This document shows positions 10,493 through 63,268 of a stretch of 64,000 nt of DNA, piece after piece (position 1 is the stretch's first letter; each line of letters starts with the position of its first letter). Below the pieces are notes generated by a model that saw only the letters and a program-made list of their open reading frames with translations, was not told where the DNA came from and made no database searches. The stretch lies in sequence record MG592456.1; one strand, 5' to 3'. Position numbers and translations under genes: made by a program.

Positions 10493-13400
10493 TTAGCTAA
10501 ACAAACGTTTCCACCACGGTCGTTCAAGTCGTTCAAGTCGAGCTTCAAGTTGTTCGCGACACGCGCGTTCTTCTTTGATGCCTTCTATCAATAACCCAAC
10601 CATGTTACCGTATGCGACTGATAATGTTTCTTCGCCTGTATCTTCGTCGGTATGCGTGACTACTACTTCAGGAAGAACTTTCTGAACTTCTTGAGCAATA
10701 ACCCCCGATTGTCTCGGTCTGCCTTCGACGTCATTACGTGTGTATGTCACACCACGCAGTTGAACGATCTTGTCAAGCGAATTTTCGATCGCTTCGATAT
10801 CGTCTTTCAACTTGATATCTGAGTAAGCAGATACGTTACCCGTAGCCGAGAGGTTTCCAACAATATCACCGCCAGTGCTATGAATAATCATTTTATGAGA
10901 AGTTGTTGAACCAGCGCCTAAGCGCAATGATCCAGCGTATGATGCGTCACTATTGCCGTAAGCGATTGCCCACGCACCACCTCCATGCGAGCTACCGCCA
11001 TAAAGATTAAGCGATTGTCTACCCGTACTATTATTAGTAACAATTGTTGAGATATTGGCAGTAGTTGTGCTGTTATTTAAGATTATCGAACCATCTGTCT
11101 TAAAATCTCCTGCCGTAATATTACCCGTAGCGGTAAAGTGGCCTGCATCATCAAATGTAAATCGAGTCGTCGTACCATCACGAATATACCAATTGCCTAT
11201 ACCCGAGTTTAAATCAGTATACATGTGAGAGCCGTTGCAGAAAAACTCAACGTCATCACCAGAACCAAATCGTAGTATATCATTATCAGCTAAGTCAATT
11301 GCGGTTCTTACACTTAACGTACCATTTACAGTCAAGTTACTAGTTACTGTACCGCCAGTTAATGGCAAGTAACTATGTGTATGTGAACTAGCAGCAGCGC
11401 CAATCCACGTTCTAATGGCGGTCGTGTCGCTACAGAACCGAACAAAGTTATCGCTGCTGTTGTTGATCCTAAAAGCCATAGCTCCGCTAATAGTGGTCTG
11501 GTTGCCGTAGCTAGGGCGTAACAAGCGCACGTTAATATCACCTGAACCATCACGAACAGCAACAGTGTTAGCCGTAGCCGCTGTGGTATGAACCGTATTC
11601 GGCACGTTACTCAACCCAACTTGCGATGGAGTGTGCGTATGCGAACCCGCAGCATAATTAGTAGAACCTGTGCCGATGTTTGTATTGGCCGCACTGTATA
11701 CGCGATTACCGTTTTCATACAATAGCGAACTAAATCGTTGAGAACTGAAATTCCAAGTATTTGAATACGATGGTTGTGTGGTAACTACCGCAGATTCAGC
11801 ACCAATATCCGCGTGGTCTGCCATTATCATCACTGGAACCATCGCATTAGCAGTATTGGAGTTCACGTATACTGCGTATACTGGACGCTGATATTGATTA
11901 ACATTTCTAACAACAACTGCTAAATGCTCAACGTTTTGATACATCACTCGAACGATTTCCATGGATATATTAGATTGCGCCGCGTCCCATTTCAGATGAT
12001 ACGACCCGTTATCACCAGCAGTCGTTGTATTTACTGCCTGAACGTCAATTTTGTATCGTTGAGTGTTGCCGCTCTTTCGATTTGTCCAAATTGTCCCACT
12101 AAATCCATTTGAAGCATACGTGTTTAGTATAATATACAAATCACGAGTGCCAGCGTTGTCAACAACCTTACTGATAACGCTTCCTGTATGGCCAATTCCC
12201 ATTTCTGACAAAGACCAACTAACATTTCCCGATCCGTTTACTGATTTGCCAGTATTGCCTATTGTTAAAGTTCTAGCAGTACCCCAGTTAGCAGTAGTGA
12301 TATTAGCAGTGCCGTTAAAGCTAGTCCCGTTAATCGTTCTTGCTGTTACTAATTTAGTTGCAGAAACTGCGTTTGCACTAATCCCCAAGAATCTTGCATT
12401 ACTTTCAGTTTCAGTGTAATAACGACCATCGTGCGTATGCGAGTCATTAGCAACAGTCGTGTTGACAGTCACAGTAGTATTGCCAGCACCTGTTACAGAC
12501 ATACTTGCAGAGCCAGTAACATCGCCCGTTAATGTAGTTGTTAAAGTTCTTGCAGTCGTCCATCGATCTGCATTTGGGTGATAGTTATCAGCAAATACAC
12601 GGGATGTATTGTTAGCGAATATATTGCCTGCAACCTGAACATTACTATCACTTCTGTTACCATACATGACAATCGAGTCGACCGTGGCATTACGTCTTTT
12701 AATCTGCCATTGGTTTATTGTCCCCTCGTACCCAAATGCAGCCCCATGATTTGAACTGTCTTCGGTCATTCTAATAAATGCATCAGTGTTTGCTGAAGAT
12801 GATATATGAATGTCGCCATTTGATTTGGCGATTACCAAGTCACCTGTCATTGTATCGCCCGTTTTATTGACATAAATCGGGTTTAACGTTGTTGAGTAAT
12901 TCCCCGCGTGCAAATAAGAATATCCACCCGTGTTGGTAGTCAAATCCTTATAAGTTTTCAACCCACGAGTTGTGTTGCCTAAAAGAACATTAGTCCCATC
13001 ATTATGAATAACCTGATGCGCGCCACCGAATCCACCACCGATTGAAATCTGCTCACCTGAACGTATCTGCCCAGTGATTGAAGCAGCCCCCGCCGCAATC
13101 GATCCTGAGACTGAAGCACTTGTTGCAATCAGAGCACCTACAGATACGGATGCAAACGCACTCGCATCTTGGTCATATATGTCTAGGCGATTTGTTGACC
13201 CATTATGATTCACGCGAATGCTATTTTTACCCGAATATTGAAACCACAGCCAATCACCAGCATTCAATCTAACATGAGAGTTATGCGTCACTTCGCCATT
13301 AAACGTCCACGCACCCGTAATCGACTCTGCTTGATTCACACGAGTTAAACGAGCGCCGTCATATACGGGTACATTGTTCGTAATACCAAGATAGTGCGCC

Positions 13401-14133: not shown

Positions 14134-14652
14134 TTATTTAGAATTTCGATGTCGTCGAGATTTGCGCTTGGCTTTTCTCAATTCTTTTCGCTTCGCAACT
14201 TTATCTGCTCGACGAACTGCGTCGTAATCCGCAGCACAAGACGCAGCAAACGCATCTGGTTTGAAAACGGGCTCTTGACCCACATACCCGAAGATCGTCC
14301 CTTTAGCCTCGTTATACGCAACGTGAGACTTATGTGCGGGGTCTGGGTTGATATCAACGTGAACTTCAAACCCACGAGTACCACACATTGGCTTGACTTT
14401 CATAGCAGCTTCACCGGCTTTATATACTTCCGTCATGAGTCGACTACGTATGCCGTCTTTACACGACATATATGCTGGTTCAGTCTCAACAACTTTAAAC
14501 ACTTGAGCACCTTTGTTGCCCTCGAAATGAATAATAATTACAGTTGCGTAACTAATCATGTCGCTTTTACGTTTGCTATCGCACCCGACGTACACAGTAC
14601 TGCTCGGATGGCTGTTATTGATAGCAACTTCTATGGATTCCCAATCGAACAT
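14134..14652 (-). CDS. DUF458 RNase-H-like protein
   Basis: VYVGCDS, YATVIIIH, RLMTEV, EVHVDIN, KPDAFAAS..AD motifs; GAGGA RBS before MFDWES. Confidence 0.8.
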   Translation of the reverse strand: MFDWESIEVAINNSHPSSTVYVGCDSKRKSDMISYATVIIIHFEGNKGAQVFKVVETEPAYMSCKDGIRSRLMTEVYKAGEAAMKVKPMCGTRGFEVHVDINPDPAHKSHVAYNEAKGTIFGYVGQEPVFKPDAFAASCAADYDAVRRADKVAKRKELRKAKRKSRRHRNSK

Positions 14653-14700: not shown

Positions 14701-16134
14701 TTAAACGTCGTAGCGCTCAACATTAACTGTTTTTAACATGATCTTGACTGGCTCAAGTTCACCGCCCAACAACGAGGTCAGGATTGACGGACTACAGCCT
14801 GATACAAGTGCAGTACCCGCAGTTCCTGTTTTAACAGGGACGTTGCCCGCTCTTGCGTGAATATTCCAGAACACTAGCTGTGGCATGTCGTAACCATGAC
14901 GAGCATAATTCGACTTAATTTCGTCGAAATTGGTTTTATTAGAGGAGCGCCACCCCGCGCTATTCGCCGTGTCGAATTCCATGTCGCTCAAGATTAGCAT
15001 CTTAGTCGGCATTTCACTCTGAGGCAAGTTAGCGCTTGTTGCTCGTTCAAGCAACACATTAAAGCAGCCGCTAATGTTAGTACTCATGTCTTCACCAGCA
15101 CGTGACATGTTGGCTAAACGAGTTTGCAAATTATCACCGATTAACTTGTGAAAGTTAGGGCGACTTGAGAATGTAACGAACTGGTCTTGGAAGACGCCTT
15201 CGTTGCGCTCTGCAATGTAGATACCAAGACTCATAGCGACGTCTTTGCAAGATACACCATCGCCATATGAGTCAGCGCCGTTAATACCACAACCCATAGA
15301 GCCTGATACATCAACTACGGGTAGAATGCGCTCGTCTGAGCCTTCCATGTAGTTCGGAAGTGCTTTCCATTGCTCATTCGCAACAACGGCATTGCCGCGA
15401 CTAACACTACGCACGACATCATATGGGTATACAGCACCCGCATTAATCTTCGCTTCGCCCTTCACAAGTGATTCGATGTAGCTAGAATACTTATCAGTTG
15501 CATTGCGACCGAACGATTTTTGATAGCGTGCTGAAGCTACAGACGGCAACTTACCAAAGTCGATCGCATCCCATTCACGCGCACACATTTTCTGCTCGAC
15601 GGTGTCTGACAATGTACTAAGAATCTTGCGCCATTGCTTTGACTTAATACCAAGAGACTTGATAGTTTTCTTAAACACATGACCGTTTGCGCTACCTTCA
15701 CGAGGGAACCACTTTGCAGCTAACGAGTTTTTATCGTTGACGATTGCATGAGTCCACAATGTGATTGCATCAGCCTCAAGATCTGTACCAAATGCACACA
15801 TCAAGTCATCGAAACGACCCAATTCTGGCACTTTAGACATCACAACACGTGCAATATCAGGGCGATTGACACACAAGCGAGTAAAGATCTTACGGAAAGT
15901 TTGACGTTCCCCAGCTCCACCGCGTACATCACGTGCCCATAGCAAGATTCGAGTTGCCAGCTCAGGATTTTCACCGAATGCTCGATCGAACATACCAAGT
16001 GACTCGTTATTACCACGCATCGCGCCAATAGTAAAAAACAAGTTTAGACACTCGTTGCCTGAAGTGCTGTGAGTCACTGCACCATTTGCGGTACGTGCAT
16101 CGTTTGTTTGCATTGCGTTTAAAAAAGCTGACAT
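14701..16134 (-). CDS. DUF2828 family protein (TROVE-like helical region plus vWA domain; Ro60-like architecture)
   Basis: RDVRGGAGER, KWFPRE, KINAGAVYPYDVV, vWA MIDAS DVSGSM, ILSDMEFD, VFWN. Confidence 0.85.
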   Translation of the reverse strand: MSAFLNAMQTNDARTANGAVTHSTSGNECLNLFFTIGAMRGNNESLGMFDRAFGENPELATRILLWARDVRGGAGERQTFRKIFTRLCVNRPDIARVVMSKVPELGRFDDLMCAFGTDLEADAITLWTHAIVNDKNSLAAKWFPREGSANGHVFKKTIKSLGIKSKQWRKILSTLSDTVEQKMCAREWDAIDFGKLPSVASARYQKSFGRNATDKYSSYIESLVKGEAKINAGAVYPYDVVRSVSRGNAVVANEQWKALPNYMEGSDERILPVVDVSGSMGCGINGADSYGDGVSCKDVAMSLGIYIAERNEGVFQDQFVTFSSRPNFHKLIGDNLQTRLANMSRAGEDMSTNISGCFNVLLERATSANLPQSEMPTKMLILSDMEFDTANSAGWRSSNKTNFDEIKSNYARHGYDMPQLVFWNIHARAGNVPVKTGTAGTALVSGCSPSILTSLLGGELEPVKIMLKTVNVERYDV

Positions 16135-16169
16135 TTTATAATTCCCTAATTTGTTTGCTGTTTAATGTC
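16130..16169 (-). promoter_or_regulatory. CAGCAA-motif leader hairpin sequestering the DUF2828 RBS and start codon
   Basis: GACAUU-AAA-CAGCAAAC-AAAUU-AGGGA(SD)-AUUAUAA-AAUGUC; the closing strand contains the AUG. Confidence 0.7.
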
Positions 16170-19992: not shown

Positions 19993-20254
19993 CAGATTTC
20001 TTCGTTGCTTGGCGTGCCAAAGCCGCAGTTCCAGCAATAGCCGCTACTTTAGCACCCGTCTTAGCAGCACTGCCCACCTTTTTTGCCTTGTCACGAAGCG
20101 AAGACTTCTTCGACTGTGGCTTGTCTTTCGACTGTGGCTTGTCTTTCGACTGTGGCTTGTCTTTCGACTGTGGCTTGTTATTTGACTTAGGCTTTTTATT
20201 CGGCTTAGCCTCTTGAAGTTGTCCCATGAACTCTTCAAAAGTTTTTTCACTCAT
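19985..20254 (-). CDS. Lys-rich putative internal head protein with KDKPQS repeats
   Basis: MSEKTFEEFMGQLQE/A leader; GGAG RBS; CTAAATA upstream. Confidence 0.7.
   Translation of the reverse strand: MSEKTFEEFMGQLQEAKPNKKPKSNNKPQSKDKPQSKDKPQSKDKPQSKKSSLRDKAKKVGSAAKTGAKVAAIAGTAALARQATKKSDE
20109..20180 (-). repeat. 18-bp coding tandem repeat, about 4 copies (KDKPQS)
   Basis: TTCGACTGTGGCTTGTCT repeated on the + strand. Confidence 0.9.
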
Positions 20255-20765: not shown

Positions 20766-20914
20766 AGACATCGGTGCAAGTTTTCGATACATTGCAATCG
20801 GATCCGAGTCATTTCCTACTCATCACACCGAGGGCGAACATTATCGCTGAGAAAGCAGCTAGTTGCCCATATTACTTTTATAGTTTAGTTTTTATTAGTT
20901 GCTGAAAAATGTCT
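20766..20914 (-). ncRNA. CAGCAA-motif RNA, long form
   Basis: AGACAUU-UUU-CAGCAACU ... GAUGUCU closing helix; follows tRNA-Ser and precedes a terminator. Confidence 0.5.
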
Positions 20915-21512: not shown

Positions 21513-21588
21513 TGGAGCTGGTACGCAGAATCGAACTGCGACCTAAGGATTTGCAATCCCCTATCCTACCTGATTAGACCATAGGAGC
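21513..21588 (-). tRNA. trnC: tRNA-Cys(GCA) with two C:C mismatches in the acceptor stem
   Basis: GGGGA-TTGCAAA-TCCTT, U73, CCA; the 5' end overlaps the endonuclease ORF. Confidence 0.75.
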
Positions 21589-22197
21589 ATGTTTACAATT
21601 ATCAAAGTGCCACCGTTTCATAACACCGCCCTTGCCAACTTTACCACAATGAGGACACGTGACTTCATCAATCGAGTGTTCTTCATAATGCCTCTTCAAA
21701 CTCTCTGAAATTTTTTGCTTTTGTGATTCAGTCTTATCTTGTTTGCCAATCTTTATACCATGTTCGACCGCCGCAGCATAACGCTCTTCGCCACGTTTTA
21801 CCCAATAATTATCAGCGTACTTCTCTCTGATTTTATCACTCACCGCACGACCAGACAACGTTTTAGAAATTTTCGCCTTAGATTCATCAGTGTGTGGTAT
21901 CCCACTACGATTAAGATGGTCGAACCCACCTTCACCACCCAACTTCAGATTATATGTCATGGAGTTTTCTACAAACTCACGATCAACATACACAGCCTCA
22001 CGCTCGTACATTTCATCAGAACTGTCACATTGTTCTAGAATTTCACACTCGAAGCTATCAACGCCATACTTGTTAATTGCACGTTTCAGAAGCTTACCGG
22101 ATCCGATATACCCATCTTCTAGGTCTTCGGTTTTGTGTGCTCCGATGTAGATCTTACCATTGGTTTTATTAGTGGTTTTATAAACAATATAATACAT
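21574..22197 (-). mobile_element. free-standing Seg-like GIY-YIG homing endonuclease gene with NUMOD3 and C-terminal CPHC..RWHFDNC domain
   Basis: IVY-KTTN..NGKIYIG..K...GYIGSG..L..AI.KYG..F..EIL; inserted in the tRNA cluster as T4 segB is. Confidence 0.85.
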
Positions 22198-23573: not shown

Positions 23574-23876
23574 ATTGTAGCAACTATTAGTTGCTATGGA
23601 TATCAAGATACAGATAATCACGAAGTGTTTTATCGTCTTTTGCTTTAATCGCGGTTGACTATTCACTTTATTCGCTAGTGAAAGCTATCGCCTGATTCAG
23701 TGACGCACCTATTCTCATGTTTCCATAAGAAGATATCTTTCTCTTGAGACAATGCAAGCACTATCCGAGTTAAGATGATCACTTTGAGTATGATTATTTT
23801 TTGCGGTACATTATCTTACTCAACATATGCGCCATGCCGAAGCAGAGGGATCACAGTATGATGAGCTTCTTAATTT

Positions 23877-24359: not shown

Positions 24360-24433
24360 TGGTGCTTCTAGGCGGACTCGAACTGCCACGACTTGATTAC
24401 AAAACAAGCATACTGCCATTATATTATAGAAGC
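24360..24433 (-). tRNA. trnT: tRNA-Thr(TGT)
   Basis: CTTGT-TTTGTAA-TCAAG, CCA. Confidence 0.9.
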
Positions 24434-24438
24434 GAATC

Positions 24439-24543
24439 TGAGTGTGTATTTACCAGCGCACCAGCGTGCATACCAAGCACTGCGAGAATCGAACTCGCGC
24501 CGTTCGTGTAAAAGACGAATTTGTTGTTTGCTGTAAACACTCA
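24439..24543 (-). ncRNA. circularly permuted tRNA mimic (YrlA-like) with CAGCAA motif and Lys anticodon loop
   Basis: terminal helix UGAGUGU/ACACUCA, UUA-CAGCAAAC, UUCGU-CUUUUAC-ACGAA, GCGAG-UUCGAUU-CUCGC T arm, loop-closed GUGC/GCAC acceptor-like stem, D-like arm; no CCA. Confidence 0.8.
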
Positions 24544-24551
24544 ATAGTATT

Positions 24552-24625
24552 TGGCAGGTCTAATAGGGTTCGAACCTATACCACGTCTGTCAAAGAGACG
24601 GGTGCTTCCATTACACCATAGACCT
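24552..24625 (-). tRNA. trnQ: tRNA-Gln(TTG)
   Basis: CGTCT-CTTTGAC-AGACG, G73, CCA. Confidence 0.95.
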
Positions 24626-25747: not shown

Positions 25748-25805
25748 AGAATGCGTTTTGCTTGAAAGCCAATTTTCAAATTTTGTTGTTTGCTGAATAC
25801 ATTCT
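25748..25805 (-). ncRNA. minimal CAGCAA-motif RNA with Glu-type anticodon loop
   Basis: AGAAUGU-AUU-CAGCAAAC...UUGG-CUUUCAA-GCAA...GCAUUCU. Confidence 0.7.
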
Positions 25806-25912: not shown

Positions 25913-25987
25913 TGGTGCGTCGCCTGAGATTTGAACTCAGACCAACTTGGTTAAAAGCCAAGTGTACTACCATTATACTAACGACGC
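25913..25987 (-). tRNA. trnK: tRNA-Lys(TTT)
   Basis: CTTGG-CTTTTAA-CCAAG, CCA. Confidence 0.95.
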
Positions 25988-29230: not shown

Positions 29231-29354
29231 TGGTGGAGAGAGCGGGATTCGAACCACGCGACCGAAAGATTTACTTAGTTAAAAGTTTGCAGTAGGCATT
29301 CTTGTCAGAATACACATAACATTCTTTTGCTCTACCAGACTGAGCTATCTCTCC
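29231..29354 (-). ncRNA. tRNA body with CAGCAA-type insert in the anticodon arm
   Basis: GGAGAGA/UCUCUCC-A-CCA, D arm, bulged T arm; insert GUAUUCU-GACA-AGAAUGC-CUA-CUGCAAAC. Confidence 0.75.
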
Positions 29355-29588: not shown

Positions 29589-29732
29589 GAGAGTGCATTG
29601 AGCGGGGTGCAGGAATCGAACCTGCGTCACGATCTTTGAAGGATATGCGTTTTGGTTGCTGAATACAAGCTTGTCAGCTTGCGTTTAGCTACGTGTGTTA
29701 TCCACTACACCAACCCCGCTCAATGCACTCTC
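29589..29732 (-). ncRNA. tRNA body with CAGCAA insert, UCA anticodon-like loop and 20-bp extended acceptor helix
   Basis: GCGGGGU/ACCCCGC, D and T arms; GCAAGCU-GACA-AGCUUGU-AUU-CAGCAACC; AUC-CUUCAAA-GAU; no CCA. Confidence 0.75.
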
Positions 29733-30080: not shown

Positions 30081-30332
30081 TTACGTTTGAATGATAATGC
30101 CGCTTTCAGTTTCACCTGCTTCTAGGCATTGATGCTTGATCTGTAGCTGCGTAACGGCAGCTTGCAATTCGTTAATTGCACGATCATACAGCTTCATGTT
30201 TCGCCCTTGCGAGGCAATTTGGTCAGCTTGCATGCCGATGATATATGTCAACAGTACAATGTTTTCATCCGTTGTAAGTTCTTCACCGGCATCATACTTG
30301 TCAACAACGGCTTTAGTAGATAGATCACTCAT
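30081..30332 (-). CDS. hypothetical coiled-coil protein
   Basis: ORF overlapping the gp57B stop. Confidence 0.65.
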   Translation of the reverse strand: MSDLSTKAVVDKYDAGEELTTDENIVLLTYIIGMQADQIASQGRNMKLYDRAINELQAAVTQLQIKHQCLEAGETESGIIIQT

Positions 30333-30780
30333 TGTTTTCAATCCAATTCAAATCTAGTGGCTCAACGTACTCATCTACTAGACGAATATCGAGATTAACA
30401 AATAGTGGAGTTATTTTGTCATCGTATGACAGCGTAACGTGCGGGGAGTAATCAGGGTAGTCATGTGTCCCACCAGCAGATATCAAGTCATCATGACGCT
30501 CTGAGAGCGCATCACAACTAAGTTTAGCAACGACAGCGTATTTGCCGTCTTGCGTCTTCCAGCAGTCCACATAATTAACCTTTGCTTGATAAGTGTTATC
30601 AGTCGCAGGTACATCTAGTTGTTTACGACTATACAATATAGTCGCGTGGAATTGCTTTGAATCTAATGGATTAGTTAGACGAAGAACTCGTTGCAGAGTG
30701 ATTAACTCTTGTTGACTCGCTTCGTCTAACTTAACACCGACATAAGTTCCCTGAGTCTCATTGTACTCAGAAAGATTCAT
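30325..30780 (-). CDS. 57B: gp57B, 2H phosphoesterase-like
   Basis: two HxT/S motifs (FHATILYS, PHVTLSY); T4 gene order. Confidence 0.9.
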   Translation of the reverse strand: MNLSEYNETQGTYVGVKLDEASQQELITLQRVLRLTNPLDSKQFHATILYSRKQLDVPATDNTYQAKVNYVDCWKTQDGKYAVVAKLSCDALSERHDDLISAGGTHDYPDYSPHVTLSYDDKITPLFVNLDIRLVDEYVEPLDLNWIENNE

Positions 30781-62032: not shown

Positions 62033-63268
62033 ATGAAAGGGTATTTCTATCACAATTCGATACGAAAATACGTACTTCTGATGGGAAACTTGTTCTCGAA
62101 TATATACGTCGCTAGAGGTGATGAATATAGAAAGGTGCCAATTACAGTGTCGTCAAAGGAGCAATTCGTTGCTGCTTTGAATAGTCAAGAACTGAATGGC
62201 GACAACTCAATTGCAAAAGTGGCGACGATGTTGCCACGCATTGGGTTAGACATGGTTTCGTGTACGTACGATTCGACTCGAAAAACAAACATTACAAATC
62301 GAAAATTGTCTCGCGACGTTACGGGAGACAGACCGAAGTCAAATACTCAATTTAATCCAGTGCCGTACGATTTTGAATTTGAGGTTAGTTTATATACGCG
62401 ACATCAAGACGATGCGTTTCAGATTATAGAACAGATTCTACCATACTTTCAGCCACAATTCAATGTAATGATCAAAGAATTGAACGAAAGTGAAGTTGTA
62501 GTTGATCAGCGCGATATTCCAATCATTCTGGAATCTGCTGTGCCTGAGACGACATTTGAAGGTGGTGCAGGTGAAATGCGTCACATCGAATGGACGCTGA
62601 ATATGCGTATGAAAGGCTGGTTATATCCACCTACAAGCTCACAATTCGGTGAAATTCGCACGATTTACTTGGATTTCAACGACGAAGAACAAGTGATCAT
62701 ACATGCTGAACGTGTTCCGGTCGAAAGTACATCTGAATTCACGTGGTTACGCCGCAGTGAAGTATCGCTTGATTATGAGGCATCATGGAGATCTTCCGTT
62801 GATTCGCTGTATGACGTAGAGTGGGATTATCAGCCAGTTGTAGAAGCAAGTTATTCTACTGATTGGTACCAACGTCCTCAAGTCGATGCTGAATATGAAC
62901 ATAGATTCAACGTGAGGTCAGAGATTGATTTGACTCTAGAATCTGCATGGGATTATCAAACAGTTGTCGACGGGGTTTATTCAGTCGAGTGGGATTATCA
63001 GTCAGTTGTAGATGCAAGTTATTCCATTGAGTGGGATTATCAGTCAGTTGTAGACGCAAGTTATTCCATTGAGTGGGATTATCAGTCAGTTGTAGATGCA
63101 GGTTATTCAACCGAATGGGATTATCAGTCAGTTGTAGATGCAAGTTATTCAACCGAATGGGATTATCCACCTTCGACAGTTGTAGATGCAAGTTATTCAA
63201 CCGAATGGTCTCGTCGTTCTGAAGTTAGTGCCTACTCCAATACGTTGTGGGAGAGCGAAGACTTCTAA
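62033..63268 (+). CDS. 15: tail terminator gp15 with C-terminal 14-aa repeat extension
   Basis: YFYH.SIRKY...G.LF, VPI....KE, LPR, QILPYFQP; followed by YSxEWDYQSVVDAS repeats. Confidence 0.93.
   Translation: MKGYFYHNSIRKYVLLMGNLFSNIYVARGDEYRKVPITVSSKEQFVAALNSQELNGDNSIAKVATMLPRIGLDMVSCTYDSTRKTNITNRKLSRDVTGDRPKSNTQFNPVPYDFEFEVSLYTRHQDDAFQIIEQILPYFQPQFNVMIKELNESEVVVDQRDIPIILESAVPETTFEGGAGEMRHIEWTLNMRMKGWLYPPTSSQFGEIRTIYLDFNDEEQVIIHAERVPVESTSEFTWLRRSEVSLDYEASWRSSVDSLYDVEWDYQPVVEASYSTDWYQRPQVDAEYEHRFNVRSEIDLTLESAWDYQTVVDGVYSVEWDYQSVVDASYSIEWDYQSVVDASYSIEWDYQSVVDAGYSTEWDYQSVVDASYSTEWDYPPSTVVDASYSTEWSRRSEVSAYSNTLWESEDF
62760..63240 (+). repeat. 42-bp coding tandem repeat (~10 degenerate copies, the last 5 near-perfect)
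   Basis: GAGTGGGATTATCAGTCAGTTGTAGATGCAAGTTATTCCATT unit. Confidence 0.9.

What the first reader, a model, noticed from the sequence alone, without database searches (positions are those of the whole stretch)
24439..24543. Circularly permuted tRNA-Lys mimic with YrlA architecture
The 5'-to-3' order is terminal helix, CAGCAA module, a perfect anticodon arm (UUCGU-CUUUUAC-ACGAA, UUU), a canonical T arm, an acceptor-like stem closed by a loop (GUGC-UUGGUAU-GCAC), a D-like arm (GUG..GCUGGUAAA..UAC), and then back to the terminal helix. The T arm, closed acceptor, D arm order is that of YrlA Y RNAs. It cannot be aminoacylated, and a normal tRNA-Lys exists at 25913, so a decoy or scaffold role is inferred. 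tRNA-Lys(UUU) is the target of PrrC and PARIS.
Basis: partly seen in the sequence, partly recalled or inferred. Interest (0 to 1): 0.85.

Follow-up and report, generated by a model that had tools for sequence, protein, structure and literature searches.

The report
Phage Y RNA shaped like tRNA
This 105-base stretch in a marine Vibrio phage's tRNA gene cluster is a conserved, folded non-coding RNA that looks like a rearranged tRNA and most likely partners the phage's own Ro60-like protein; it is probably not a dedicated copy of lysine tRNA.

Summary
The window is Vibrio phage 1.081.O (a KVP40-like T4 relative). The element sits at the same spot in all KVP40-like phages, and 14 of 25 base pairs show compensatory changes.

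A covariance model built only from the Vibrio copies finds full-length relatives in a Felixounavirus, a metagenomic T4-like phage and a mycobacteriophage. The last two also score, below threshold, against Rfam YrlA.

The tRNA-Lys reading does not hold. The "anticodon" loop is UUU only in this phage, and in relatives it is 6-8 nt with other triplets.

The phage encodes a DUF2828 protein (14701-16134) whose predicted fold matches only Ro60 structures. A module of a 7-bp helix, 3 nt, then CAGCAA lies beside DUF2828 genes on the same strand in 60 of 80 viral contigs and in five named phage groups. The finding is the tRNA-like member of this module family.

Best reading: it is a Y RNA for a Ro60-like phage protein, released by tRNA processing. 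Binding and function are inferred. It is a new variant of a known kind.

The parts
24439..24543 (-). Whole tRNA-like Y RNA candidate (105 nt between the two strands of the terminal helix)
   Evidence: It is conserved between tRNA-Gln and tRNA-Thr in all KVP40-like phages.
24537..24543 (-). Terminal helix, 5' strand (UGAGUGU)
   Evidence: Pairs with 24439-24445. Compensatory variants are GAGUGAU/AUCACUC in L024 and AGACCGU/ACGGUCU in L016.
24439..24445 (-). Terminal helix, 3' strand (ACACUCA)
24520..24536 (-). UUA-CAGCAA-ACAACAAA: proposed binding motif for the DUF2828 protein
   Evidence: Invariant in A1. The same helix + 3 nt + CAGCAA module lies beside DUF2828 genes in many phages.
24503..24519 (-). 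Anticodon-like, or V-arm, hairpin UUCGU-CUUUUAC-ACGAA
   Evidence: The stem is kept with one compensatory change. The loop varies in sequence and length, 6-8 nt.
24482..24498 (-). T arm GCGAG-UUCGAUU-CUCGC
   Evidence: Aligned with high posterior to the Rfam tRNA T arm. Three of its 4 modelled pairs covary.
24466..24480 (-). Closed acceptor-like (AS) stem-loop GUGC-UUGGUAU-GCAC
   Evidence: Four of 5 modelled pairs covary. The loop UUGGUAU is nearly invariant among the Vibrio phages.
24446..24465 (-). Reduced D-like region: GC-UGGU-GC hairpin, a GC that may pair with the GC of CAGC, then UGGUAAAUAC
   Evidence: A GG is conserved in the small loop. The exact pairing in this phage is ambiguous.
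14701..16134 (-). Gene for the DUF2828 + DUF7788 protein (477 aa), a Ro60-like ring plus vWA protein and the proposed partner
   Evidence: Pfam. AlphaFold model with pLDDT 81.8 and pTM 0.81. All top 10 PDB matches are Ro60, at probability 1.0 and TM about 0.6.
16130..16169 (-). Operator-like copy of the module in the 5' UTR of the DUF2828 gene: GACAUU-AAA-CAGCAA...AGGGAA...AAUGUC, with the start codon inside the helix
   Evidence: The same arrangement occurs in VH7D and KVP40.
25748..25805 (-). Short Y-like hairpin RNA (58 nt): AGAAUGU-AUU-CAGCAAACAACAAAA...GCAUUCU
   Evidence: Orthologues with different, still complementary helices occur in KVP40, VS2 and VH7D.
20766..20914 (-). Longer Y-type candidate (149 nt): AGACAUU-UUU-CAGCAAC...GAUGUCU, followed by a terminator-like hairpin at 20750-20730
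   Evidence: This is the weakest candidate: fold z = -0.8.
24552..24625 (-). tRNA-Gln, 9 nt upstream of the element on the same strand
24360..24433 (-). tRNA-Thr, 6 nt downstream. RNase P cleavage at its 5' end would set the element's 3' end.
   Evidence: for the gene. The processing step is inferred.

Best explanation
The element is a phage Y RNA of the YrlA type. Its two ends pair into a helix that is followed on the 5' strand by UUA-CAGCAA. This helix-plus-motif module is the proposed docking site for the phage's Ro60-like DUF2828 protein.

The body of the RNA is a circularly permuted tRNA-like fold: a V or anticodon-like hairpin, a T arm, an acceptor-like stem closed by a loop, and a reduced D hairpin. 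By analogy with bacterial Ro60/YrlA particles, this fold would stabilise the RNA and tether or attract a tRNA-recognising factor such as a nuclease, a repair enzyme or a host defence protein.

The RNA is probably transcribed as part of the tRNA operon and released by the enzymes that mature the flanking tRNA-Gln and tRNA-Thr. It is one of several CAGCAA-module RNAs in this phage. A copy of the module overlaps the start codon of the DUF2828 gene and may allow the protein to repress its own translation.

Shown here: the conserved, covarying structure; homology to YrlA-like RNAs; the Ro60 fold of the protein; and genomic coupling of the module to DUF2828 genes. Inferred: physical binding, processing, and biological role, most plausibly tRNA or RNA surveillance or counter-defence.
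For: 1. The element is conserved at the same locus in all KVP40-like phages. Covariation is strong: 14 of 25 pairs compensatory, 0 of 500 shuffles as high.
2. Model R1, built only from the Vibrio copies, finds full-length matches in Felixounavirus E9 (34.2 bits), the metagenomic T4-like locus L024 (29.5 bits) and mycobacteriophage Clautastrophe (23.7 bits). It finds more in IMG/VR loci. L024 and Clautastrophe also match Rfam YrlA across the full model, at 32.4 and 39.3 bits.
3. L024 has nearly the same 5' module (GAGUGAU-UACAGCAAACAA) with a canonical T arm, AS stem, UA and D arm.
4. The DUF2828 protein has a Ro60 fold.
5. In 80 IMG/VR loci encoding DUF2828 homologues there are 92 strict modules on the gene strand outside the gene, and 80 of them read CAGCAA. 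Seventy-two lie within 800 nt of the gene, in 60 loci, with 28 different helix sequences. The opposite strand has 23, and shuffles average 18.9.
6. Tandem modules sit next to the gene in a Listeria, a Campylobacter, a Felixouna- and a mycobacteriophage.
7. An RNA-first search of IMG/VR recovered L028, where four tandem modules lie immediately upstream of a DUF2828 gene.
8. An operator-like copy spans the gene's start codon in three phages.
9. A 2024 preprint reports that the Ro60-like gp130 of Bas63 counters the ppl defence and guesses that some neighbouring 'tRNA genes' are Y RNAs (PMC11482910).
Against: - There are no expression, binding or modification data.
- The window element itself gives no Rfam YrlA match at E <= 10, and its relatives score below YrlA's gathering score of 69.
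- The motif is CAGCAA, not the GNCGAA(N)G of described YrlA RNAs.
- The element is 8.3 kb from the DUF2828 gene, not within the 4 kb typical of YrlA.
- Single-sequence folding energies are unremarkable.
- Aeromonas phiWae14 and Pseudomonas Astolliot showed no strict Y-type module near the gene.
- Seventeen of the 80 loci had no strict module in the 3-kb flanks.
Confidence: 0.72

Rival explanations
1. tRNA-Lys anticodon-arm decoy. The UUCGU-CUUUUAC-ACGAA hairpin mimics the tRNA-Lys(UUU) anticodon stem-loop and soaks up or misdirects a host anticodon nuclease such as PrrC, RloC or PARIS AriB. This could be an added function of the Y RNA in this one phage.
For: - The loop here fits anticodon-loop rules: 7 nt, U33, UUU, A37.
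- A 5-bp stem with a loop of about 7 nt at this position recurs in the Vibrio and Felixounavirus versions.
- The loop is the most variable part of the RNA, which diversifying selection could produce.
Against: - UUU occurs only in this phage.
- Loops in relatives are 6-8 nt, often lack U33, and read GAU, AUG, UAC and others.
- Canonical relatives (L024, the mycobacteriophage) lack an anticodon-like hairpin altogether.
- Variability is equally explained by a lack of constraint.
- Anticodon nucleases such as PrrC are known, from the literature rather than from tests here, to depend on modified bases in real tRNA-Lys.
Confidence: 0.08
2. A stable tRNA-like RNA that acts independently of DUF2828. 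Possible roles are a processing or punctuation signal in the polycistronic tRNA transcript, or a sponge for tRNA-modifying or tRNA-processing enzymes, comparable to the long-known stable RNAs of unknown function in the T4 and T5 tRNA clusters.
For: - It lies inside a tRNA operon, 8.3 kb from the DUF2828 gene.
- T4 (rnaC, rnaD) and T5 (RNA1, RNA2, RNA3) carry tRNA-like stable RNAs in the fetched tRNA-region loci, where tblastn with the window's DUF2828 protein found no homologue.
Against: - The T4 and T5 RNAs lack the helix + CAGCAA module.
- The module that defines this element tracks DUF2828 genes across unrelated phage families.
- The module also occurs next to the gene in contigs with no tRNA genes nearby (L026 and L028).
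Confidence: 0.13
3. A permuted tRNA gene, or a decayed tRNA pseudogene. Either the transcript is cut in the closed loop and matured into a chargeable tRNA, or it is a functionless remnant.
For: - Rfam's tRNA model scores 34.9 bits, above its gathering score of 29.
- M. smegmatis YrlA is cleaved by RNase P in the equivalent loop and receives CCA (PMC4201824).
Against: - The closed stem is only 4 bp here and 5 bp in close relatives, against the 7 bp that RNase P needs.
- No CCA or discriminator base is encoded.
- ARAGORN finds nothing.
- Conservation with compensatory changes, and an invariant closing loop, argue against decay.
Confidence: 0.04

Closest known systems
YrlA (Rfam RF02553), the tRNA-like Y RNA bound by bacterial Ro60/Rsr (Chen et al. 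2014, PMC4201824)
   Same: - The 5' and 3' ends pair.
- A conserved protein-binding motif lies on the 5' strand.
- Then come V, T, closed acceptor-like (AS) and D stem-loops, in that order.
- It is encoded on the same strand as a Ro60-fold protein.
- Several Y RNAs occur per genome, one tRNA-like and others short hairpins.
- It is co-transcribed with tRNAs, as for D. radiodurans Yrn2-tRNA-Asp-Yrn1.
   Different: - The motif is (U/A)UA-CAGCAA, not GNCGAA(N)G.
- The partner belongs to Pfam DUF2828/DUF7788, not TROVE.
- The D arm is reduced in this phage.
- The V hairpin is anticodon-arm sized.
- It lies 8.3 kb from the gene, inside a tRNA cluster.
- It gives no Rfam YrlA hit.
Yrl1 and Yrl2 of Thermus phage phiLo, bound by phage Ro60 (PMC12135203)
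   Same: These are phage-encoded Y-like RNAs next to a phage Ro60-fold protein. phiLo Ro60 is the top structural match of the window's protein.
   Different: The phiLo RNAs use the CGAA motif in a stem-bulge-stem and, as described in that paper, have no tRNA-like domain. The protein is a recognisable Ro60 homologue rather than a DUF2828 protein.
Bas63 (Felixounavirus) gp130, a Ro60-like counter of the ppl defence (PhageMaP preprint, PMC11482910)
   Same: Felixounavirus phages such as E9, of the same genus as Bas63, encode a DUF2828 homologue of the window's protein at about 44% identity. That Bas63 gp130 is this homologue is inferred from the preprint's description and was not tested here. In E9 the gene sits directly upstream of a tRNA cluster that contains four CAGCAA-module RNAs, one with the same tRNA-like layout.
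   Different: The preprint only guessed that some tRNA genes might be Y RNAs. No RNA was identified there, and nothing is known for the Vibrio phage.
Stable RNAs of unknown function in the phage T4 (rnaC, rnaD) and T5 (RNA1, RNA2, RNA3) tRNA clusters
   Same: They are small stable RNAs, some tRNA-like, embedded in phage tRNA operons.
   Different: They have no helix + CAGCAA module, and the fetched T4 and T5 regions hold no DUF2828 homologue.
Circularly permuted tRNA genes (red alga Cyanidioschyzon; some archaea), from general knowledge
   Same: The 3' half (T arm, acceptor 3' strand) precedes the 5' half (acceptor 5' strand, D arm).
   Different: Those are processed through a circular intermediate into normal 7-bp-acceptor, CCA-tailed tRNAs. 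Here the stem is 4-5 bp, the closing loop is conserved, and extra Y-RNA modules are attached.

Membership tests
YrlA / bacterial Y RNA | The 5' and 3' ends pair into a terminal stem. | tested here: met
   A 7-bp helix, with compensatory variants in L024 and L016.
YrlA / bacterial Y RNA | T-like, closed AS, and D-like stem-loops in that order, often preceded by a V stem-loop. | tested here: met
   The D arm is reduced here but canonical in relatives L024, L018, L075 and L090.
YrlA / bacterial Y RNA | GNCGAA(N)G motif near the 5' end. | tested here: not met
   The sequence reads UUACAGCAAAC. CAGCAA is invariant in homologues.
YrlA / bacterial Y RNA | Rfam RF02553 score at or above the gathering score of 69 bits. 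| tested here: not met
   No hit at E <= 10 on the element. Relatives score 32.4 and 39.3 bits.
YrlA / bacterial Y RNA | Encoded within about 4 kb of a Ro60 (TROVE) gene, on the same strand. | tested here: inconclusive
   Same strand, but 8.3 kb away. The protein has a Ro60 fold but belongs to DUF2828, not TROVE. In other phages the module RNAs lie 20-800 nt from the gene.
YrlA / bacterial Y RNA | Bound by the Ro60 protein; carries Psi55 and D modifications. | not testable with these tools
   This needs immunoprecipitation, gel-shift assays and modification mapping.
Canonical tRNA | Cloverleaf with a 7-bp acceptor made of free 5' and 3' ends, a D arm, and an anticodon arm. | tested here: not met
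   ARAGORN finds none. The Rfam tRNA hit of 34.9 bits omits the D arm and has a mispaired acceptor.
tRNA-Lys mimic or decoy | A Lys-type anticodon loop conserved among homologues. | tested here: not met
   UUU occurs only in this phage. The loop is 6-8 nt and variable.
Circularly permuted tRNA gene | After processing it yields a 7-bp acceptor with a discriminator base and CCA. | tested here: not met
   The closed stem is 4 bp here and 5 bp in relatives, no CCA is encoded, and the loop UUGGUAU is conserved.
Ro60 family (for the partner protein) | HEAT-repeat ring plus a C-terminal vWA domain. | tested here: met
   The AlphaFold model matches Ro60 chains over the full length, E 1.6e-07 to 5e-06, and the next hits are vWA domains only. 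A sequence search of the PDB found no Ro60.

The most novel reading that the evidence does not exclude
DUF2828 proteins and their CAGCAA-module RNAs form a widespread phage ribonucleoprotein system that has not been described. It is found in T4-like vibriophages, in Felixounavirus, Campylobacter, Listeria and mycobacteriophages, and in many uncultured phages.

In this reading the protein docks on a helix + CAGCAA site that differs from the Ro60 CGAA site. The attached tRNA-shaped modules come in both circular permutations, and they present tRNA look-alikes to host tRNA-targeting defences or to repair enzymes. The hypervariable anticodon-like loop would track whichever host nuclease the phage meets. 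The protein would also repress its own mRNA through an operator copy of the site.
Probability: 0.2. Interest if true: 0.9.

Novelty: new variant of a known kind. Interest (0 to 1): 0.7.

Why it matters
Ro60/Y RNA particles are known in animals, bacteria and a few phages, but their function in phages is open. A recent screen found that a Ro60-like protein of a Felixounavirus counters a bacterial defence system, without knowing its RNA partner.

This analysis gives concrete, testable candidate partners and a candidate recognition motif (helix + 3 nt + CAGCAA). It shows they are coupled to DUF2828 genes in dozens of phage lineages. It also suggests that some "pseudo-tRNAs" and unexplained spacers in phage tRNA clusters are Y-like RNAs.

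For genome annotation, the element should be labelled a Y-like ncRNA, not a tRNA.

Tried and rejected
- **Rfam on the element.** At a permissive threshold only the tRNA model hit, with no YrlA match. No Rfam family covers the short module RNAs in other phages.
- **Sequence search of the PDB.** The DUF2828 protein found no Ro60. The fold comparison was needed.
- **First collection pattern.** It was too strict and returned only KVP40 and VH7D.
- **Second pattern (GAGTGNTTNCAGCAAACAA).** It gave two chance hits in coding-like sequence without a helix, L027 and L029, besides the informative L028.
- **A loose 6-bp helix scan.** It is dominated by noise, at about the chance rate. Only the strict version (7 bp, exactly 3 nt) was used for counts.
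- **T4 and T5 tRNA regions as controls.** Their stable RNAs are unrelated. There is one isolated T5 match of unknown meaning.
- **Aeromonas phiWae14 and Pseudomonas Astolliot.** No strict Y-type module lies near the gene. Aeromonas instead has the module as a hairpin inside tRNA-like RNAs.
- **Literature.** Searches for DUF2828 found nothing relevant. Two reviews could not be read, and the supplementary phage list of Chen et al. 2014 is not held. Prior description of some of these RNAs elsewhere therefore cannot be excluded.

Full report
**Source and setting.** The window is identical to the last 64 kb of Vibrio phage 1.081.O._10N.286.52.C2 (MG592456.1, Schizotequatrovirus, a KVP40-like relative of T4). 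ARAGORN finds 26 tRNA genes, all on the minus strand between 20.9 and 28.5 kb. The finding lies on that strand between tRNA-Gln (24552-24625) and tRNA-Thr (24360-24433). It has 9 nt of spacer on the 5' side and 6 nt on the 3' side.

**Checking the observation.**
- helix UGAGUGU/ACACUCA
- UUA-CAGCAA
- UUCGU-CUUUUAC-ACGAA
- GCGAG-UUCGAUU-CUCGC
- GUGC-UUGGUAU-GCAC
- a G-rich D-like region

ARAGORN calls nothing here. Rfam's tRNA model reaches 34.9 bits only by aligning the anticodon-like arm and the T arm while skipping the D arm. The single-sequence fold is not exceptional (z = -1.8), so the case rests on comparison with other phages.

**Conservation.** The same element occupies the Gln/Thr spacer in 6E35.1a, VS2, KVP40, V09, QD01, VH7D, TCU-VP03, ValKK3, phi-Grn1 and nt-1. 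RNAalifold recovers the terminal helix, a V hairpin, the T arm, the closed stem and a small D hairpin. On a 13-sequence alignment 97.4% of cells pair and 14 of 25 pairs carry compensatory changes. None of 500 shuffles reached this, and slid registers pair at only 42-57%. That alignment was fitted to the model, which inflates the figures somewhat.

Three parts are invariant or nearly so: the helix base, CAGCAA, and the closing loop UUGGUAU. The "anticodon" loop is the least conserved part. It reads CUUUUAC here and UCGAUAC, CUAUGAA, CUUACGA, CUGAUGAA, AUCGGA or CCGAUAA elsewhere. Lysine identity is therefore not a property of the family.

**Link to YrlA.** Chen et al. (PMC4201824) describe YrlA as paired ends, a 5' motif GNCGAA(N)G, then V, T, AS and D stem-loops. 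The element has that order. The window element itself gives no Rfam YrlA hit at E <= 10.

A covariance model built only from the Vibrio copies (R1) finds full-length matches in three places:
- Felixounavirus E9 (L016 9420-9566, 34.2 bits)
- a metagenomic T4-like contig (L024 869-1018, 29.5 bits)
- mycobacteriophage Clautastrophe (L018 6531-6681, 23.7 bits)

It finds six more matches in IMG/VR loci. L024 begins GAGUGAU-UACAGCAAACAA, almost the window's 5' end with a compensatory helix change. It continues with a canonical T arm, a long closed stem, UA and a canonical D arm. L024 and the mycobacteriophage RNA both match Rfam YrlA over the whole model at 32.4 and 39.3 bits, below the gathering score of 69. 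The element is therefore a diverged YrlA-type RNA with a reduced D arm and an anticodon-arm-sized V hairpin. The Felixounavirus version has the same V hairpin.

**The protein.** The phage encodes a 477-aa DUF2828 + DUF7788 protein at 14701-16134 on the same strand. Sequence search of the PDB finds no Ro60. An AlphaFold model built on 49 homologues (pLDDT 81.8, pTM 0.81) has ten top PDB matches, all of them Ro60. They are Thermus phage phiLo, Xenopus and Deinococcus Rsr, matched over the full length at probability 1.0 and TM about 0.6. The next matches are isolated vWA domains. tblastn finds homologues in 711 phage records. These cover Felixounavirus, Campylobacter, Listeria, Staphylococcus and Enterococcus phages, jumbo phages, and mycobacteriophages in which the gene is annotated "Ro-like RNA binding protein". 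In the loci I fetched, the gene usually sits in or beside a tRNA cluster.

**The module.** The motif recurs elsewhere in the window and in Aeromonas and Felixounavirus loci. I therefore scanned for a 7-bp helix strand, exactly 3 nt, then C-N-GCAA, with the complementary strand 10-170 nt downstream. Tandem copies lie on the gene's strand immediately beside the DUF2828 gene in four fetched phages:
- mycobacteriophage Clautastrophe: 3 copies, the middle one being the YrlA-like RNA
- Listeria AG20: 3 copies
- Campylobacter F374: 2 copies
- Felixounavirus E9: 4 copies

A single copy lies 16 nt after the stop codon in contig L026, which has no tRNA genes within 10 kb. The chance expectation is about one per 15-kb locus.

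Searching IMG/VR with the RNA motif alone recovered L028, where four tandem UGAG...CUCA modules end just before a DUF2828 homologue.

In 80 IMG/VR loci fetched with the protein there are 92 modules on the gene strand outside the gene, and 80 of them read CAGCAA. Seventy-two lie within 800 nt of the gene, in 60 loci, with 28 distinct helix sequences. The opposite strand has 23 modules (7 CAGCAA), and shuffles give a mean of 18.9 and a maximum of 29. The T4 and T5 tRNA regions lack such tandem modules. This is strong genomic evidence that helix + CAGCAA RNAs and DUF2828 belong together. Binding itself is inferred.

**Other copies in the window.**
- A 58-nt hairpin RNA at 25748-25805 shares CAGCAAACAACAAA with the element.
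- Weaker candidates lie at 23747-23816 and 20766-20914.
- Two tRNA-like RNAs at 29234-29354 and 29589-29732 carry the module as a GACA-looped hairpin + C(U/A)GCAA(A/C)C in place of the anticodon loop. That is the opposite circular permutation of the same two parts.
- In the 5' UTR of the DUF2828 gene, GACAUU-AAA-CAGCAA...AGGGAA...AAUGUC puts the start codon inside the helix. The same arrangement occurs in VH7D and KVP40. It looks like an autoregulatory operator, which is what one would expect if the module is the protein's binding site.

**Mechanism.** The most likely account is a Y RNA.
- The RNA is transcribed with the tRNAs. Promoter-like sites lie upstream, and a terminator-like hairpin at 20750-20730 closes the cluster (consensus matches only).
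- It is freed by RNase P at tRNA-Thr and by 3' maturation of tRNA-Gln.
- It is bound through its helix + CAGCAA end by the Ro60-like protein.
- Its tRNA-like body then serves as a stabiliser and as a handle for a tRNA-recognising factor.

In bacteria that factor is PNPase. In phage phiLo a Ro60/Y RNA/host PNPase complex was assembled in vitro (PMC12135203). For Bas63 the Ro60-like protein counters the ppl defence (PMC11482910). Which of these applies here is unknown.

**Rivals.**
- A tRNA-Lys decoy is not excluded for this one phage, but it lacks comparative support.
- A DUF2828-independent stable RNA is contradicted by the module's distribution.
- A permuted functional tRNA or a pseudogene is contradicted by the 4-5 bp closed stem, the absence of CCA, and the covariation.

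**Novelty.** Y RNAs and YrlA are known, including in some phages. I found no description of CAGCAA-type RNAs partnered with DUF2828 proteins in Rfam 15 or in the searchable literature. One preprint speculated that such RNAs exist. I classify the finding as a new variant of a known kind. Two reviews and the supplementary tables of Chen et al. 2014 could not be read.

Noticed in passing
window 29234-29354 (-): A 121-nt tRNA-like RNA (Rfam tRNA 52 bits) with normal acceptor, D and T arms and an encoded CCA. About 50 nt replace the anticodon loop: a hairpin GUAUUCU-GACA-AGAAUGC followed by CUACUGCAAAC. GenBank calls it tRNA-Asn. KVP40 'tRNA-Pseudo-3' and two Aeromonas phiWae14 RNAs have the same design.
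   Followed up: partly
window 29589-29732 (-): A second tRNA-like RNA with a 19-bp extended terminal stem (GAGAGUGCAUUGAGCGGGG / CCCCGCUCAAUGCACUCUC). In the anticodon position it carries the same insert type: CAAGCU-GACA-AGCUUG + UAUUCAGCAAC. GenBank calls it 'tRNA-OTHER'.
   Followed up: partly
window 25748-25805 (-); also 23747-23816 (-) and 20766-20914 (-): Further helix + C-N-GCAA RNAs in the tRNA cluster. The 58-nt one has orthologues with covarying helices in KVP40, VS2 and VH7D. The other two are weaker candidates.
   Followed up: partly
window 16130-16169 (-): An operator-like copy of the module in the 5' UTR of the DUF2828 gene, with the AUG inside the helix and the Shine-Dalgarno sequence in the loop. 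It is conserved in VH7D and KVP40 and suggests translational autoregulation.
   Followed up: partly
window 14134-14652 (-): An RNaseH_like (PF04308) gene lies immediately downstream of the DUF2828 gene. The same neighbour follows the DUF2828 gene in metagenomic locus L024 (11747-12289). It may be a functional partner.
   Followed up: no
window 30325-30780 (-): The gene annotated in GenBank as 'RNA ligase/cyclic nucleotide phosphodiesterase' matches Pfam Acb1 (anti-CBASS) at E 7e-44. It is therefore more likely a counter-defence phosphodiesterase than an RNA repair enzyme.
   Followed up: partly
window 21574-22197 (-): A GIY-YIG/NUMOD3 homing-endonuclease-like gene sits inside the tRNA cluster, as segB does in T4.
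   Followed up: no
window 20113-20174 (+): The heptamer CTGTGGC recurs four times at 18-nt spacing, which indicates a short tandem repeat. It turned up as noise in the helix scan.
   Followed up: no
window about 62997-63190 (+): The GenBank record annotates 'CRISPR spacers' inside the tail sheath stabiliser gene. This is probably a repeat-finder artefact in coding sequence.
   Followed up: no
L017 10761-10878 (+) (Aeromonas phage phiWae14): A 118-nt tRNA-like RNA that appears to contain two T-arm-like hairpins (GGUUCGAAUCC twice). It overlaps an annotated tRNA-Ala.
   Followed up: no
L023 about 11576-11650 (-) (phage T5): A single isolated match to the strict module (ACUCUUA-UUA-CAGCAAC...UAAGAGU) next to a bidirectional terminator. 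No DUF2828 homologue lies in the fetched region, so it is probably chance.
   Followed up: no
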